Assembly (NCBI RefSeq): GCF_000143415.4
Contig: NW_003314261.1
Location: forward strand, 1,812,117-1,876,116
Origin: Selaginella moellendorffii
Taxonomy: Eukaryota > Plantae > Lycopodiophyta
DNA length: 64,000 bases
Reading direction: 5' to 3'
Shown: in pieces, positions 23,281 through 29,799 of the stretch
How positions within the stretch are numbered: position 1 is the first letter of the stretch
How the letters are laid out: each line of letters opens with the position of its first letter
The notes under the pieces: model-generated
What the model was told of the DNA's origin: nothing
What the model saw: only the letters and a program-made list of their open reading frames with translations
Databases searched by the model: none
Made by a program: the position numbers and the translations under genes

Positions 23281-23956
23281 GGATGATCACAAAGTACATT
23301 AACTTTCAGCATTTAGATTAGGATGGTTTCTCTTCAGTATGCATATGTCACAAAATGGATAATTTAGTGTTAGTATGTTTTCCTCATCTTACGGTACATG
23401 GTTTATCTAAGGGGCGACTTGCTCAGTGAAAAGGACCATATCAGGTCTTGTAGCAAGTGTGACCACAAGTTTATGAGGTTTAGCATAACGTCCAACAGAC
23501 CAATCCTCCAAAATTTATGCATATGCAACAATTGAAACACTTCATACAAAAGGATCAGGAACAACTAATACCATTTACAAATCCATCAATACCTCTTTCT
23601 AATGTTCCTCCAGATTCTGGCCCATCTACAAAGAACCTTAATAGTTTTCTATTATTCCAAAAGGAAGGGATAATATAAAGTCCAAGATTACAATAACAAT
23701 GCTATATACTAATATTAATGTAATGGGATTTTAATAAACCACTATAAGCTAAAGCTGTTAGGCTAATTGAGATGCACATTTCTATTAAGAATAATAGAAA
23801 AATAAGTAATAAAAACGTTAAGAATTTTTAGATACTTGTGATCAATTTACTCCCTTGAACATAACTTGCCAGCACGATGGACACTTGTCGATGCCATGAA
23901 GCAGCACCAGACTATAAGCCTGTAGCCTTTTGAGAGCTGTTCACAAATTTTTGGCA

Positions 23957-24157
23957 ATGGCGGATGTTGTGTCGCTGATAATTGGAGCAATTCTCTTTTT
24001 GATCTTGTCACCAGGGCTGCTGCTGCAAATCCCCGGCACGGAGAGGGCGGTGGAATTCACCAATGGTCGTACGAGCGTCGCTTCCGTTATCACGCACACC
24101 ATCGTGTTCGTCATTCTGCTCTACTTGTTTCAGCTCGCCTTCCATGTCCACTGCTGA
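23957..24157 (+). CDS. DUF3339 small transmembrane protein
   Basis: MADVVSLIIGAILFLILSPGLLLQIPG..VEFTNGRTSVASVITHTIVF matches the plant DUF3339 pattern. Confidence 0.9.
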   Translation: MADVVSLIIGAILFLILSPGLLLQIPGTERAVEFTNGRTSVASVITHTIVFVILLYLFQLAFHVHC

Positions 24158-24229
24158 AACTGGAAATTCGTAGTAACTACTCTGTCTACTATTCCTTGTC
24201 TTGATCAATAAGAGGCGATTCATTCCACT

Positions 24230-25058
24230 CTACTTGAGATTCAATGGCGCACAAATACCAACGATTTCCTCCCCGTCTTCAAGGGAGCCGAGCTTCCAAT
24301 CCGGGTCGCCGTCGCGTATGGCATTCACTTCAGTGTGATCTACGAAGAATTCCGTGTTTATCCTGAAGCCGGTAATTTCTCGCTTGTGGATGTAAGGTAC
24401 CTGTACAAGGAGATGCGTGAGAAATAAAAGAGAGTAACATTTCAAGGGGTGTTTTTACTTGCGATGAACGGATGATGCCCACAGCATGTTGTGTGAGAAA
24501 GCTTGGATCAACTCGTGTGTTCGTGGCCGATTCCAGTGCACGAATCGCGTATGGATGACTGGACACAAGCCCGGCAGCGACATCCGATGGCCCATCCAGC
24601 GCACGCTACAGAACAAAAGCTTGGATAAAGGAGAATAGAAAAACGAAGACTCGCCTTGATCAGCTTGGTTGCCACTCCTTGGTGTCGAAACAAAGGATTT
24701 ACGACAAGTTGTATAATCCACACCACGTCCCCTGTTTCAATTAAGCAAAAAGAAACAAACTAAATGAAAGAAACAATGGAGAAGAAAAGGATGACACACC
24801 TTGAAGAGGCCCATACCAAAAACGCCGGCAAAACGCTTGCCCAATCACCTTGTTCTCTAGGAGCGCCAGAGAAACAAAGCAGCGGTCGTCGAAGAAGATC
24901 TCCCTGCGCATCCATGAGACGCTCATCTTGGCTCGCTTACCAACACGATCCGGCGGCGCTCCTCTTCCCCAAACTCCATACGACGTGGAGAAGAGCTTCG
25001 CGCACTGCACCGCGAGCTCGTCAGAGAGAGTCGACGCAAGACGAAACTCCATGGACAT
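24230..25058 (-). CDS. GNAT-like acyltransferase-fold protein (copy B); 4 exons, intron 2 GC-AG
   Basis: Splices in frame: AKLFSTSYGVWG..RVGKRAKMS..GQAFCRRF | VWIIQLVVNPLFRHQGVATKLIK (GNAT motif A) | GLVSSHPYAIRALESAT | VPYI..NTEFFVDHTE..WKLGSLEDGEEIV*. Start is at 25058 or 25079. Confidence 0.75.
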
Positions 25059-25083
25059 GAAAGCCCTAAAGCTACACATCCCT

Positions 25084-26265
25084 TTACTTTTCAAACGGTA
25101 AGACGACCGCCACGAACTCCTTTCCCTCTTCCAGTGCTCCTAAACTCCAGTCCGGCATCTTGGCTAGCAAGTCGAGCACCTCGCTGTGATCCGCAAAGAA
25201 TTGGGTGTCCACGAAGCCATCGGCAGGCCTTGCAGGTAAGGCACTCCAGAAGCCTTCATCATCGCTGGGCCATACACGACGACCATATCTGGAGAAACAC
25301 GCTTCCCTGTCGCCCTTTCTAGCGAGCGAACCGCAAATGGATGGCTTGTGATAAGCCCCACAGCCGCAGGGATAGCACCCATTGCATTCTGCAAGACAAG
25401 AAAACAAGGACAACCGTAAATCCCACTCCACTCTCCAATCATAAGAAGTTAAGAACTCACCTTCATGAGTCTTATCGCAATCTTCTTGTTACGGTGATTG
25501 GAAGACACCACCAGTTGCGTTATCCAGAGGGCTGGGCCGCCTGGTGAAAACCACATTATAGATTTGAATCGAAAGGAGAATCGAGGCAAATACCTGCGAA
25601 GCGAAAGCTTCTGTGGAACACGTAGCCCGCTAGACTCCCGTTCACAGTTGCAAAGGTGAGGCAACAGTCGTCACTGAATAGATGCTCCTTTCGGAGCCTT
25701 TGCACGGTAGTCTTCACCTGATGCCCCACCCTAGCAGCCGGAGCTCCGGGTCCCTAAGTGGCATAGCACGCACAACTCTTGCAGCGTCTCCTCCTGGATG
25801 TCATTTCGCTGGAGCGTGGTAAACTTTATCCCATCTTGATCCTGTGGTCTCGATTAGAAACGAAAGTGGTTCCAACGTATTTACAAGTCACGGGTCACAG
25901 GCCCTTGTCCAGTCGAATTTTCTCCCCAGGCCCAGAGGCAGCCTGTAAGCACTACATCACGATTATCAACATATGCTACAATGTAATATACCTTTGGCTT
26001 CCTTTTCAACCAAGCCTTGATCATTTTGCCGAAGTTCTTTATATTCTTCCGAGCTGACGAACTTAATTCTGCATGCGTAAAAGGCAGCCAAAAAGATGTC
26101 AAAGTGGAAAAGCCAAAACACACCTGGCACAAGTCATCCAACTCCTTTCAGTCTCTCTCGAAACTTCCTACCATCACTGGCTCGCGTATTCCCTCCTGTA
26201 GATGCTGTGAGGTCATGTCAACGCAGCGCAAATGTCAAACAAGAAAAGAAGACACCATACATCAG
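25084..26265 (-). pseudogene. GNAT-like paralogue (copy A), disrupted, with extra upstream small exons
   Basis: YAT*GPGAP..RVGHQVK..LAGYVFHRSF | LWITQLVVSSNHRNKKIAIRLMK | GLITSHPFAVRSLERAT..GVPYL (frameshift ~25222) DTQFFADHSE..WSLGALEEGKEFV. In-frame stop plus frameshift near 25755-25770. Confidence 0.7.
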
Positions 26266-26329
26266 TGATCGAGATATAAGCCCTGTGAGAAAATAAGAAC
26301 GACGGAAGCGAGTTGATAACCTATGAAGA

Positions 26330-26760
26330 ATGATCGATCCAACGACTGGAAATACGACCACACGCACACGCGAATAAATGTTCGATCGACAAACCTGGAT
26401 CGGCCGATTGAGAAATATTTCGAGAGAATTCAAGATCGATGGAAAGAACGCACGGAAGAACAAAGCCGGATCGAGAGAAAGAAGGATCGACCGAAAGAAA
26501 GCCGGAACGGCCGATTGAGAAATATTTTGAGAGAAAGAAGCATTGGCCGAAAGAACACACGGACGGACAAACCCCCGGTTGAGAAATATTTCGAGAGAAA
26601 GAATGATCGGCCGAAAGAACGTATGGACATCGGCACAAAGAAAACATGCAGGGAATGGCCGGAGCTGGTAGAATCGTCGATTTCAAGGAGAAGATGATCG
26701 ATTTCAAGGAGAAGATGATCGATTTCAAGGAGAAGATGATCGATTCAAGGAGAAGAAGCG
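26330..26760. repeat. Tandem repeats: GATCGGCCGATTGAGAAATATTTCGAGAGAA-type units and a 21-bp GATTTCAAGGAGAAGATGATC array
   Basis: The TTGAGAAATATTT(C/T)GAGAGAA core occurs at ~26408, ~26515 and ~26579; the 21-mer is repeated about 3.5 times at 26679-26757. Confidence 0.85.
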
Positions 26761-26939
26761 CGCTCTTCGGCTTCCAGCGCCAAGCCATCTTAGTCCAGAC
26801 ACGTGCAATGAAGAGGGACGGCTGAGATCGCGCTAAGAATATTCGTGAGGGTGAAGGATTCCTGAGATATTCGCTCTAGATTCTGTTAAGCATATTCCTC
26901 TATGTTTAAAATTCGATTGCAGGAAAACGTTAGATAAGC

Positions 26940-29799
26940 CTACCAAGTAGGATCTGGTGAAAACCAAGCCTCGCTACTCCACTCGCGATGATCGTGGCCA
27001 GCGTACTCCACATAGCGCTTCCTGCTGCATCCGCGATCATCTCTGTCGATCACGGTGCTAGAATAGTAGTAATCGCGCTCGGCTCTGTCAAAGTAAATGT
27101 ACCTCTCGTGACGTTCGTCCTTGTATCCAGAATGGTACTCGACCTGCCGTCGCCTCCACAGATCATCCGCAAAAGGATCTCTTTCCCAATTGAGATGATC
27201 TCCTTGCATGCCATCGTCACTCTTCCGCCGATGCCAGTGATCACTTTCCATGTCATTGTCTCTCTTCCGGCGCCTGGAGCCTGGTTGACACCGCCTCTCG
27301 TCGATGGACTCATCTCTTTCTCGCAGAGAATGGCCTCTCTCCCGACGTATGGAACAAAGATGTCGCTCCTCGGTTGAGCACTCTCTTGAGTGACGCTCCA
27401 CCTCAGTTGAGCACTCTCTTTCCCGCCGCATAGAGTGACGCTGCATCTTGCCGAAAGAACGATCTCTTTCCCCCTCAGTTGAGCACTCTCGCCGCATAGA
27501 GTGACGCTGCATCTCGCCGAAAGAACGCTCTCCTTCCCAACGAGCGGACTCCAGCCGCCTGCGGTCGATAGTAGGATGTTCTCTGGAGCTCGAGTATCCC
27601 TCCTGCTTTGGACTTGCTCCATGACCACTACGGTTTCTCTCCGTTTGTCCCTGCTGCCTAAAGCTCAAATCCTTCTTACGCGCAAAGCTGAGAGCTGTAC
27701 CACCAAGTTTGATAGGATGCTCCAGCGCAAGCACCGCTTCCGTAGCAGCAACCGAGTAGAAGTTGATGAAGGCTTTGTCGCCCGTCGGAAAAAACTTCTT
27801 CAGCAGCTCCTTGCCGTATTCTCTGACCGAGCTGTTCGATGCAAACGTCCTGTCCAGCAACTCGCACAAAGCTCCCTTGACTAAATCTCCTGGAAGCTTG
27901 GGAAGGCCGGACACTCTGATTGCATCCGTCTTCTCGTCGTTCACAACGCCACTGGTTTTATTTACAGCACCCGGTCGGCAGTAATCGGCGTGTCGGAAGA
28001 TTCGAAGCGGCAAGCCTCCGAGAAGGAACTTGTCCGGCTCGTCAACGTAGACGTCCATGATGGCATCCGCGGCAGCCTCGGAGCTGCAGTGCACAACAGC
28101 GTTGGGCCACCGGGAGATACAAACCTTGCAGCTCTCGTCCGGTTTGATCTCTCGGAGGAGGCACTGGAAGAACATTTCCACGCTTCCAATATCATCTTCT
28201 GCGAGCAGATTGACCACCATTAGTTTCACGTTCGATAGTCTTGCGAGTGTTCTGTAAGACTTCGGTCTCTCCAGGCGAGTAGCGTGAGTGCTCGTCTTGT
28301 CGAGCGACTCCAGCGTGAGTTCTCCAGTGTTAGTCCGACCATTGCAGTCCTTGGCGGAAAACGTTTTGCTTTCTTGAGGAAGTCCTTCAGCAGTCCCGAG
28401 TTGAGGAGTAACATTATCGGACCCGGGAGAACATACGATCTCAACTTTATCTCTCGGCGCTGTGTTGCTGCGACAGAGGAAGGAACCCATGGAGATGGAG
28501 TCCAGAGACCTGTTTTTACCACACCTGTAGAATATCAAATCTGCCGCGACCTCCGACCCCATACCCAAAAGTGCATCCGTCCCCTCGGGAGAAATATCCA
28601 TCGACTCGATGATCTCGCCAACTTCCTCTTCCGGCAAGATTTTCTTGAAGTGTTGCTTGAGGGTATTCTCCGTCCAGTCTTTGCTCGGTCCCCGAAAGTA
28701 TACGAGCAAATCTCCGCATCTCTGAGACACAAAGTCCATGGAGAGAATTTCCATAGGCGAGTAAAGCCTTCGAATATCGAGCTCCTTCTCCTTGACGTAA
28801 GGCGGGCTCAACATGCAAGCCTCGAAGAAGAGCTCAGCCACCACCCCTGATACGAACTTAAACTTTGCAGCATTCCCGTCGCGCGAAACCATGACGAGCT
28901 CAGCCTCTTCCGGAACAGCCTCAAATCTGCCATGAACCAGTGCCTTTAGATCCGATAGCTCGCAGCTCTCTGGAACATCTTCGGCAACTATCTTCCACTC
29001 GTAAGCTTGACGAATCGGAACTGGTGGTGGAAATCCTGGTGGAAAGCCAGTATCACAAGACTCCTGTTCCATATCACAAGTATCCTCGAGCTCTTTCAGC
29101 TCTTGAAACTCCTGTAAGCCCCCAAGATCCCGTAAGTCCCCGAGCTCCAGCAACTCCTCATCCTGTAGCATAGAAGTTGACGCAAAGTTTGCAAAGCTTT
29201 CCTGCCCGTCTTTGTGATGCTCTTCGGCAGAAGTCGAAGGCAAAGCGAGCATGGGAATGTTCTCCTGGACGTTCCTGTGCGCTTGATGCGAGGCGTCCAA
29301 GTTTTCAGCATCCTGCTCGGCCTCCTCCTCGCCCAGCCGTGGCTTGAATCGAGAGCATCTCGTCAAAGGAGCAACTCGCTTCCTCTTTTTCCCGATTCGA
29401 GTCAGCGGCCAGGACGCTTGTTGCAAGAGTGGTCTCGGAGCAGCGACACGCGCCACCTTGTTCTCGACGCACCTCTTCAAAAGGAGAACCTCACGTATCA
29501 CAGGCTTGTAGCCCCTGGCTTGGATCGTTTCTAGGTTTCCCTGGTATTCCTACGAAGAAAGAAAAGAAAGAGAGCTAGACGTGAAAAACGAAGACAAAGA
29601 AGAAGAGACGAACCTCTAGAGCCCTGGCAGCGCCAAGCCGGACACTTTCCTCGTCAAACAAACTCTTTATCGGCTCTCCGGGGGCGATGGCATACTTCCG
29701 CCTGAACGCCGCCTCGTTGAGCTCCATTCCCCTAAAGATCCTCGCTATGCGATCGATTTGCTCCATCCCTACGAAATCCGGCAGCTTTACGACCCACAT
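26940..29799 (-). CDS. Uncharacterised protein with ~4 degenerate RRM-like domains and an Arg/Glu/Ser-rich repetitive C-terminus; intron 29550-29613
   Basis: An 853-codon exon is joined in frame to upstream exon MWVVKLPDF. RRM-like segments include AIRVSGLP..DKAFINFYSVAATEAVLALE..IKLGGTALSFAR and KLMVVNL..AVVHCSSEAAADA..LGGLPLRIFRHADY. Confidence 0.7.

What the first reader, a model, noticed from the sequence alone, without database searches (positions are those of the whole stretch)
24230..26265. Tandem GNAT-like genes resembling an uncharacterised fungal/bacterial family: candidate horizontally acquired acyltransferase system in a plant
Seen: two adjacent paralogues share the order LFS..YG(V/I)WG, G.R.K.S, G.AF.R.F, WI(T/I)QLVV...(F/H)R..(G/K).A..L (GNAT acetyl-CoA motif A), GL(V/I)(S/T)SHP(Y/F)A.R.LE.AT, VPY, (D/N)T.FF.DH.E and W.LG.L.(D/E)G.E. 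Copy B splices into an intact ~210-aa ORF; copy A is disrupted. Both carry short host-type introns at two shared positions, so this is an integrated gene and not contamination. Inference from recall: this motif string matches conserved hypothetical GNAT-fold proteins of filamentous fungi and some bacteria, and I do not know it from seed plants. The substrate is unknown.
Basis: partly seen in the sequence, partly recalled or inferred. Interest (0 to 1): 0.8.

Follow-up and report, generated by a model that had tools for sequence, protein, structure and literature searches.

The report
Foreign-type acetyltransferase gene pair in Selaginella
The spikemoss Selaginella moellendorffii carries two neighbouring, transcribed and spliced genes for an uncharacterised type of acetyltransferase that is otherwise seen in fungi, a slime mould, green algae, giant-virus-like DNA and bacteria but in no other named land plant, so it was probably acquired from outside the plant lineage; its substrate is unknown.

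Summary
On the minus strand lie two tandem genes of one GNAT subfamily. Copy B (CDS 25058-24230, four exons) gives an intact 217-aa protein. It is 98% identical to NCBI's LOC9636095 of Selaginella moellendorffii, and spliced RNA contigs confirm its structure, including a GC-AG intron. Copy A (26216-25084) is broken here by six lesions, but it is an intact 294-aa gene on the other haplotype and is also spliced. Pfam (PF00583, 40 bits), an AlphaFold model (pLDDT 95.6) and fold searches (Z about 13) show a GNAT fold with no close solved relative. A profile search finds 1146 cluster representatives. The only named ones are Selaginella, two chlorophycean algae, Physarum, Armillaria-group fungi and bacterial GNAT-methyltransferase fusions. 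Several others lie on giant-virus-like contigs. Flanking genes are ordinary plant genes. Both copies fall in a supported clade (96/95) with the fungal and virus-like members, apart from the algal clade. AU tests disfavour a plant-plus-alga clade (p 0.002; fairer test 0.04). Copy B's first intron matches a basidiomycete homologue in position and phase. Horizontal acquisition is likely, the donor is unresolved and the substrate unknown. Interest is moderate.

The parts
24230..25058 (-). Copy B coding region. Exons 25058-24800, 24731-24655, 24605-24459 and 24400-24230 (stop included), giving an intact 217-aa GNAT protein.
   Evidence: The exon joins are the same as in P0001/LOC9636095. PF00583 scores 40 bits, E 5e-10, on P0001. 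A 914-nt spliced contig (X5 record 20) covers all the joints.
24732..24799 (-). Copy B intron 1: 68 nt, GT-AG, phase 1, inside the Gly codon four residues before the invariant Trp of WIIQLVV.
   Evidence: The joint 24730/24799 is seen in three runs. The Guyanagaster homologue has an intron in the same alignment column and phase, and Haematococcus has one 1 nt away.
24606..24654 (-). Copy B intron 2: 49 nt, GC-AG, phase 0. Copy A has an intron at the same position.
   Evidence: The joint 24605/24655 has ends CT..GC on the plus strand. The position was mapped.
24401..24458 (-). Copy B intron 3: 58 nt, GT-AG, phase 0, before VPY. Copy A has no intron here.
   Evidence: The joint 24397/24456 is; the copy A sequence is continuous at this point.
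23995..24229 (-). Copy B 3' untranslated region. It overlaps the convergent DUF3339 gene on the plus strand.
   Evidence: X5 record 20 extends to 23995. The DUF3339 gene is called at the equivalent place in L008.
25084..26216 (-). Copy A, a pseudogene allele in this haplotype. The gene model on the other haplotype has six exons and encodes 294 aa. The GNAT-like part lies at about 25840-25084.
   Evidence: The intact reading on L008 is. P0161:75-298 scores 234 bits against the family HMM. Spliced contigs give joints 26068/26124, 25539/25593 and 25388/25461.
25755..25774 (-). Two copy A lesions in the exon that encodes the N-terminal family motif: a 14-bp deletion at 25774 and TGG>TAG at 25755.
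   Evidence: Window versus L008 alignment; three-frame translation.
25214..25215 (-). Copy A lesion: a 7-bp deletion causing a frameshift between VPYLQG and the FFADH motif.
   Evidence: Contigs of run X1 break at this point.
25892..26180 (-). Copy A lesions in the upstream exons: 1-nt deletions at 26180 and 25923, and a 15-bp deletion at 25892 that removes an exon end and its splice donor.
   Evidence: read against the L008 exon model.

Best explanation
This is a tandem pair of nuclear genes of Selaginella moellendorffii. They encode members of an uncharacterised subfamily of GCN5-related N-acyltransferases. Shown: copy B is intact, transcribed and correctly spliced. Copy A is a null allele on this haplotype, but it is intact and transcribed on the other. 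Both proteins keep the family's conserved residues. Copy B has the acyl-CoA loop R-x-x-G-x-A after strand beta4. Inferred mechanism: the enzyme binds acetyl- or another short acyl-CoA at the beta4-alpha3 loop and the beta5 bulge, and passes the acyl group to an amine on an acceptor that is not yet known. The family-specific elements probably shape the acceptor pocket. These are SSHPY at the beta5/alpha4 junction, PY, the T-x-F-x-V-D-H-x-E motif, the W-x-L-G motif, and the two extra helices between alpha4 and beta6. Inferred history: an ancestor of this lycophyte acquired the gene horizontally, most likely from another eukaryote. A fungus is the best candidate. Large DNA viruses that carry the same family are possible vectors or alternative donors. 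After acquisition the gene gained the intron that lies after motif A. It then duplicated in tandem and the copies diverged to 37.5% identity. Copy A is now being lost on one haplotype.
For: GNAT identity:
- PF00583 scores above its cut-off.
- The AlphaFold model has pLDDT 95.6 and the canonical strand/helix order.
- The model matches RimI, Ard1 and Naa10 at Z 12-13 over about 144 residues.

Expression and splicing:
- RNA contigs from runs of four different studies carry the expected joints.

Host integration:
- The neighbours are PPR, TAXi aspartyl protease, PDDEXK_6, trihelix, C2 and DHX37-like genes.
- The same arrangement is found on both haplotypes.

Distribution:
- The profile search found 1146 representatives.
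- Among the named relatives, the only embryophyte is Selaginella. That search did recover Armillaria-group fungi at 29% identity, so its reach was adequate.
- The nearest ESM Atlas clusters are Ascomycota and Basidiomycota.

Phylogeny:
- Both copies lie in a 38-row clade (UFBoot 96, SH-aLRT 95) with Guyanagaster and the virus-like contigs. This clade is separate from the algal clade.
- The AU test rejects Selaginella plus the algal clade (p 0.0018), and gives p 0.041 when only named taxa are constrained.
- A union with the fungal group is not rejected (p 0.21).

Introns:
- Copy B intron 1 and a Guyanagaster intron share alignment column and phase.
- Three introns against three, over about 650 possible positions, gives roughly a 1.4% chance of an exact match under uniformity (my arithmetic).
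- The second A/B shared intron is absent from the fungal and algal genes. That fits a duplication after the intron was gained.
Against: - Inside the 38-row clade the tree is a polytomy, so no donor is identified.
- The two copies are not recovered as sisters, although a sister relationship is not rejected (p 0.27).
- The fairer AU test is only marginal.
- Green algae have the family, and Haematococcus has an intron 1 nt from the shared site. An old eukaryotic gene with many losses therefore remains possible.
- The highest pairwise identities (46-47%) are to a protein on a 233-kb virus-like contig, not to a fungus.
- Most relatives are unnamed metagenome proteins.
- Other lycophytes, ferns and the 1KP transcriptomes could not be searched. 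The collection evidently lacks plant transcriptome contigs: P0001's cluster has no Logan member, although Logan contigs of this species hold the transcript.
- Between haplotypes copy B shows 5 non-synonymous and 3 synonymous differences (pN/pS 0.52), too few to show constraint.
- Copy A has Lys in place of the Gly of the CoA loop.
- No biochemical data exist and the acceptor is unknown.
Confidence: 0.55

Rival explanations
1. The family is an ancient eukaryotic gene inherited vertically. It was present in the ancestor of green plants (and of fungi and Amoebozoa), then lost repeatedly. Among sampled land plants it survives only in Selaginella.
For: The family occurs in Chlorophyceae (Haematococcus, Astrephomene), Physarum and Agaricomycetes. 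An intron at, or 1 nt from, the same site is found in Selaginella, a basidiomycete and Haematococcus, which could be an ancestral eukaryotic intron. The fair AU test is only borderline (p 0.041). The deep divergence of copies A and B (37.5%) implies long residence in the lineage.
Against: No named streptophyte alga, bryophyte, fern or seed plant appears, although the search collection includes UniRef, nr and EukProt. Selaginella groups away from the algal clade at 96/95, and the union is rejected at p 0.0018. Many independent losses would be needed.
Confidence: 0.2
2. The pair derives from a giant virus (Nucleocytoviricota) that infected a Selaginella ancestor, or was carried in by one. The introns were gained afterwards.
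For: Several family members sit on dense, intron-free, virus-like contigs:
- P0054, on a 233-kb scaffold with a 991-aa D5-type primase-helicase, Bro-N and DSPc genes.
- P0094, on an 812-kb contig of ORFans with MYND and ankyrin genes.
- P0005, next to genes for the poly(A) polymerase regulatory subunit and Rpb5.
- P0004, next to PolX and DUF5759 genes.

The best BFVD structural match by far is a Terrestrivirus protein (E 1.6e-19, TMq 0.83). P0054 has the highest identity to copy B (46-47%). Maumus et al. 2014 (PMC4083422) showed that S. moellendorffii holds at least one NCLDV-derived gene family.
Against: There are no viral genes beside the pair; all neighbours are plant genes. The genes have spliceosomal introns, and one sits at the same position and phase as in a fungal homologue, which a viral DNA donor does not explain. 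Two pattern scans of IMG/VR confirmed no family member. The D5-like protein's nearest clusters include Uroviricota as well as Nucleocytoviricota. The tree does not resolve a virus-Selaginella sister relationship. The gene is not among the Selaginella NCLDV-like genes listed in PMC4083422.
Confidence: 0.15
3. Contamination or an assembly artefact: the sequence is fungal or microbial DNA mis-assembled into the plant scaffold.
For: The protein family is of non-plant type and the introns are short (49-72 nt), as in fungi.
Against: The pair lies between plant genes on one contig. It is present with the same neighbours on both haplotype scaffolds, which are 95.6% identical across the aligned 2.5 kb, indels counted. 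Both alleles appear in RNA contigs of Selaginella runs from several independent studies.
Confidence: 0.01

Closest known systems
GNAT superfamily, Pfam PF00583 (Acetyltransf_1); nearest solved structures RimI (5isv), archaeal Ard1 (4r3k, 4pv6), Naa10 (4kvm, 6c95), EctA (6sk1)
   Same: It has the same core fold and strand order and the same acyl-CoA loop after beta4. The Pfam hit is above its cut-off, and the structural Z is 12-13 over about 144 residues.
   Different: Sequence identity is only 10-18%. The best PDB profile hit is E 7e-6 and covers motif A only. About 70 extra residues are present: a long N-terminal conserved motif, and two helices plus conserved motifs after alpha4. No NCBIfam model matches. 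The acceptor therefore cannot be inferred from these relatives.
Bacterial bifunctional GNAT / class I SAM-methyltransferase proteins of about 510 aa (Bacteroidales and Planctomycetaceae MAGs)
   Same: The N-terminal half belongs to the same subfamily, scoring E 1e-40 to 1e-60 against the family profile. The Atlas structural TM by query is 0.89-0.90.
   Different: They carry a C-terminal methyltransferase domain that the Selaginella proteins lack. They form a separate, well-supported clade.
Stand-alone eukaryotic members: Guyanagaster/Armillaria (Agaricomycetes), Haematococcus and Astrephomene (Chlorophyceae), Physarum
   Same: They have a similar length (about 220-245 aa), the same motif set and 29-39% identity. 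The Guyanagaster gene shares the position and phase of copy B's intron 1.
   Different: None is characterised. The other introns differ between them, and the Astrephomene gene has none.
NCLDV-like genes of Selaginella described by Maumus et al. 2014 (PMC4083422)
   Same: Both are non-plant-type genes in the same species with relatives in fungi and giant viruses.
   Different: They are different proteins (EFJ10148 and EFJ26844, against EFJ38393 here). The present pair is not mentioned in that paper.

Membership tests
GNAT superfamily (PF00583) | Profile match above Pfam's curated cut-off | tested here: met
   P0001 scores 40.0 bits against a cut-off of 20.7, E 5.3e-10. Exon 2 of the window alone scores 20.3 bits.
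GNAT superfamily (PF00583) | Mixed alpha/beta fold with the order beta1-alpha1-alpha2-beta2-beta3-beta4-alpha3-beta5-alpha4-beta6-beta7 | tested here: met
   The AlphaFold2 model has pLDDT 95.6 and pTM 0.91, with elements in that order. 189 PDB representatives match at Z 8 or more, the best at 13.0.
GNAT superfamily (PF00583) | Motif A acyl-CoA loop Q/R-x-x-G-x-G/A after beta4 | tested here: met
   Copy B has R-H-Q-G-V-A at residues 102-107. Copy A has R-N-K-K-I-A, with Lys in place of Gly. That Gly is not invariant in the family.
GNAT superfamily (PF00583) | Acyl-CoA-dependent acyl transfer | not testable with these tools
   This needs an enzyme assay.
Uncharacterised 'WITQLVV / SSHPYAxRALE' GNAT subfamily | Full-length match to the family profile, including the N-terminal LFSxxYGxW motif, SHP, PY, TxFxVDHxE and WxLG | tested here: met
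   The alignments show these columns as invariant or nearly so. Copy B scores 212 bits and hap2 copy A 234 bits against the family HMM.
Horizontally acquired gene in a plant | Absence from related plant lineages | tested here: inconclusive
   No named embryophyte other than Selaginella, and no named streptophyte alga, appears among the relatives. However, most hits are unnamed, other lycophytes could not be searched, and chlorophyte members exist.
Horizontally acquired gene in a plant | Gene tree incongruent with the species tree, with statistical support | tested here: met
   A clade supported at 96/95 separates Selaginella from the algal clade. The AU p-values are 0.0018 and 0.041. The second value is marginal, and the groups were defined after the tree had been seen.
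Horizontally acquired gene in a plant | Genuine integration in the host genome | tested here: met
   Plant genes flank the pair, both haplotypes carry it, and spliced transcripts exist.
Endogenous giant-virus (NCLDV) insertion | Clustered with other viral genes, and intron-free ORFs | tested here: not met
   The neighbours are plant genes. Copy B has three introns and copy A five.

The most novel reading that the evidence does not exclude
A eukaryote-to-eukaryote transfer of an intron-containing gene, most likely fungus to lycophyte, in which a donor intron survived in the plant. The same GNAT family is also carried by giant viruses, which may move it between eukaryotic lineages. The pair would then be a rare case where intron position traces the donor of a plant HGT, caught while one paralogue is being lost on one haplotype.
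Probability: 0.3. Interest if true: 0.65.

Novelty: new member of a known kind. Interest (0 to 1): 0.45.

Why it matters
Genes of non-plant origin in early-diverging land plants are used to argue that horizontal transfer shaped land-plant evolution. Well-documented cases with expression, both alleles and intron evidence are still useful. This case adds three things. First, a large GNAT subfamily (more than 1000 cluster representatives) has no characterised member, and a tractable plant copy could help to study it. Second, an intron position shared between a plant gene and a fungal homologue could identify the kind of donor. Third, the same family sits on giant-virus-like genomes, which bears on whether such viruses move host-type enzymes between eukaryotes. 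The biochemical role is unknown, so the practical importance is open.

Tried and rejected
- **Pfam on single exons.** It gave only a weak GNAT hit on the 25-aa exon 2. The full-length database protein was needed.
- **Word-based search with P0001 alone.** It found only five metagenome relatives.
- **IMG/VR scans.** Two pattern-based scans matched patterns but confirmed no relative. The viral link therefore rests on the gene content of metagenome contigs and on one BFVD structural match.
- **PDB sequence profile search.** It gave only generic motif A hits. Foldseek and VIA-align gave a flat list of GNATs, with Z values tied within 1, so no acceptor can be inferred.
- **NCBIfam.** No model matched the stand-alone proteins.
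- **Cluster look-ups for names.** The tree neighbours returned almost no organism names. The contig for P0020 could not be read. P0001 is not in the gene-position index.
- **Literature searches.** Searches for the locus tags, and for Selaginella + HGT + acetyltransferase/GNAT, found no paper on this gene.
- **Trees.** The 213-row quick tree placed copies A and B apart, while a 130-row quick tree placed them together. Placement inside the large clade is unstable, and I do not rely on it. The careful search on 130 rows did not finish.
- **Bacterial gene neighbourhoods.** Those examined (Prevotella MAGs) were not conserved and gave no clue to function.
- **Earlier notes of this scan.** There were none at this place.
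Full report
**What is in the sequence**

On the minus strand of 24230-26216 lie two head-to-tail genes.

Copy B starts at the ATG at 25058. Its exons are 25058-24800, 24731-24655, 24605-24459 and 24400-24230, and the product is 217 aa. The introns are 68, 49 and 58 nt. The middle one has a GC donor.

A word search with exon 1 returned P0001, 'uncharacterized protein LOC9636095 [Selaginella moellendorffii]'. It is 217 aa, 97% identical over exon 1 and 98% over the aligned length. Its sequence has exactly the exon joins of my model.

**The host genome**

The rest of the window holds typical land-plant genes:
- a 16-repeat PPR protein;
- a TAXi-type aspartyl protease;
- PDDEXK_6;
- a trihelix Myb/SANT gene;
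- a C2-domain gene;
- a DHX37-like helicase;
- a PRISE-type reductase.

The genome is therefore Selaginella, and the pair sits among host genes.

**The two haplotypes**

The older GenBank models P0007 (SELMODRAFT_437314) and P0161 (SELMODRAFT_440007) fuse the two genes. P0007 matches the window letter for letter. P0161 and P0001 come from scaffold GL377573.1, which I fetched as L008.

The two loci are collinear and 95.6% identical across the aligned 2.5 kb, indels counted. I take them for the two haplotypes known from the published assembly (my own knowledge of that assembly).

On L008, copy A reads through as a six-exon, 294-aa gene with canonical GT-AG introns of 55, 49, 57, 53 and 66 nt. 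In the window the same gene carries six lesions:
- 1-nt deletions at 26180 and 25923;
- a 15-bp deletion at 25892 that removes an exon end and its donor;
- a 14-bp deletion at 25774;
- TGG>TAG at 25755;
- a 7-bp deletion at 25214.

So copy A is a null allele here and apparently a working gene on the other haplotype. The intact copy A scores 234 bits against the family HMM, even better than copy B at 212 bits.

**Expression**

I laid contigs of four runs from four different studies of the same organism on 23900-26400.

One 914-nt contig (X5) joins 25057-24799, 24730-24655, 24605-24456 and 24397-23995. This confirms all three copy B introns, including the GC-AG one. It also shows a 3' end that overlaps the convergent DUF3339 gene.

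Other contigs show copy A joints at 26068/26124, 25539/25593 and 25388/25461, at lower depth. Alleles of both haplotypes are seen.

The runs are recorded only as 'RNA?'. The spliced joints are what show that the contigs derive from RNA. Contig depth is not a measure of expression level.

**Paralogy and introns**

Copies A and B are 37.5% identical over 200 residues. They share two intron positions:
- The phase-0 intron after the Lys that ends the motif A helix is identical in both.
- The phase-1 intron in a Gly codon before the invariant Trp of WI(T/I)QLVV is one codon apart, next to an indel.

Copy B has a third intron that copy A lacks. Copy A has three more in an N-terminal extension of about 80 residues.

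I mapped the introns of three other eukaryotic homologues:
- The basidiomycete Guyanagaster gene has an intron in the same alignment column and the same phase as copy B's intron 1.
- Haematococcus has one 1 nt upstream of that site.
- Astrephomene has none.
- The second intron shared by A and B is absent from all three.

With three introns in each of two genes and about 650 possible positions, an exact coincidence has roughly a 1.4% chance under uniformity (my arithmetic). Proto-splice-site bias would raise that figure.

**What the protein is**

- *Sequence.* P0001 matches PF00583 at 40 bits, against a cut-off of 20.7.
- *Model.* With a 62-sequence alignment, AlphaFold2 gives pLDDT 95.6 and pTM 0.91, with the GNAT strand/helix order plus two extra helices between alpha4 and beta6.
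- *Solved structures.* Foldseek and VIA-align return a flat list of GNATs. RimI, Ard1, Naa10, NatC, EctA, a glucosamine N-acetyltransferase, AAC(2') and others match at Z 12-13, with 10-18% identity and about 144 aligned residues.
- *Sequence against PDB and NCBIfam.* A sequence profile against the PDB finds only motif A (E 7e-6). No NCBIfam model matches.

The protein is therefore an acyl-CoA-dependent N-acyltransferase by fold and motifs, with residues 102-107 reading R-H-Q-G-V-A. It belongs to a subfamily with no characterised member. The acceptor cannot be inferred.

**The family**

An exhaustive profile search gave 1146 representatives at E 0.001 or better, and 329 at 1e-30 or better. A tree of 213 domains splits them into two groups:
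- a clade of bacterial fusions of about 510 aa, with GNAT plus a class I SAM methyltransferase (Bacteroidales and Planctomycetaceae MAGs);
- a clade of stand-alone proteins.

The named stand-alone members are Selaginella only among embryophytes, Haematococcus and Astrephomene, Physarum, and Armillaria-group Agaricomycetes. The nearest ESM Atlas clusters are Ascomycota and Basidiomycota.

Several unnamed members lie on contigs that look like large DNA viruses:
- P0054 is on a 233-kb scaffold with a 991-aa D5-type primase-helicase, Bro-N and DSPc genes. The helicase's nearest clusters are viral, either Nucleocytoviricota or Uroviricota.
- P0094 is on an 812-kb contig of densely packed ORFans with MYND and ankyrin genes.
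- P0005 lies next to genes for a poly(A) polymerase regulatory subunit and Rpb5.
- P0004 lies next to PolX and DUF5759 genes.

In BFVD a Terrestrivirus protein stands far above all other viral GNATs (E 1.6e-19, TMq 0.83). Pattern scans of IMG/VR confirmed none.

**Phylogeny**

In a careful 73-row tree, both Selaginella copies fall in a 38-row clade (UFBoot 96, SH-aLRT 95). That clade also holds Guyanagaster, P0054, P0094 and P0025. It excludes the clade containing the two green algae, the Physarum clade and the P0004/P0005 clade. Inside the 38-row clade nothing is resolved.

| AU test | Result |
|---|---|
| Copies A and B as one clade | not rejected, p 0.27 |
| Selaginella with the 12-row algal clade | rejected, p 0.0018, delta lnL 53 |
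| Only the four named green-lineage rows held together against named others | p 0.041 |
| Selaginella with the Guyanagaster group | not rejected, p 0.21 |

The clade used was defined after the tree had been seen, so one search is the fairer test, and it is marginal.

**Reading**

Five observations make horizontal acquisition the best explanation:
- the patchy distribution of the family;
- the separation from the algal sequences;
- the affinity to fungal and virus-like members;
- the absence from other annotated land plants;
- the clear integration into the host genome.

The intron shared with a basidiomycete gene points to a eukaryotic donor rather than a viral or bacterial one. The intron shared only by copies A and B suggests that the tandem duplication followed the transfer.

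The deep divergence of A and B predicts that other Selaginella species should have both copies. I could not test this. The protein collection evidently lacks plant transcriptome contigs: P0001's cluster has no Logan member, although Logan contigs of this species hold the transcript.

Vertical descent with many losses, and a giant-virus route, both remain open.

Between haplotypes copy B differs at 5 non-synonymous and 3 synonymous sites (pN/pS 0.52), and at 5 of 175 intron sites. These numbers are too small to judge selection. Long-term constraint is shown instead by both copies retaining the family's conserved residues.

**Literature and novelty**

No paper in the searchable library mentions these locus tags or this gene. 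Maumus et al. 2014 (PMC4083422) describe two other Selaginella gene families with NCLDV or fungal affinities, but not this one.

I did not test it.

I class the finding as a new member of a known kind: a probably horizontally acquired enzyme gene in an early-diverging vascular plant.

Noticed in passing
window 23930-24157 (+): A small DUF3339-type membrane-protein gene lies convergent to copy B. Its ORF overlaps copy B's 3' UTR, which reaches about 23995, so the two transcripts are natural antisense partners. Contig depth is very high over this stretch.
   Followed up: partly
window 26320-26790: Tandem repeats of roughly 60-120 bp (ttctttctctcgaaatatttctcaa-like units) lie just upstream of copy A. 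The other haplotype has 117 bp more repeat sequence here.
   Followed up: no
window 26940-29501 (-): An 853-aa intron-free ORF with no Pfam match, rich in charged low-complexity sequence near its C-terminus. It is called as a 940-aa gene on the other haplotype.
   Followed up: no
L005:1380-5419: In a Prevotella MAG the GNAT-methyltransferase fusion is packed between a Ser/Thr protein kinase with MORN repeats (8-nt gap) and an FGE-sulfatase-domain protein (28-nt gap). This may be an operon. The arrangement is not conserved in L007.
   Followed up: partly
L011 (ENA ERZ27297441, contig k141_908580, 812 kb): A very large metagenome contig with densely packed, mostly unannotated, intron-free genes, including zf-MYND and ankyrin proteins. 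It is probably a giant-virus genome and carries a member of this GNAT family.
   Followed up: partly
window 25076-25214: One contig (X1 record 6) runs unbroken from copy B's exon 1 through the 25-bp spacer into the 3' end of copy A. This suggests read-through transcription, or pre-mRNA or DNA carried in that run.
   Followed up: no
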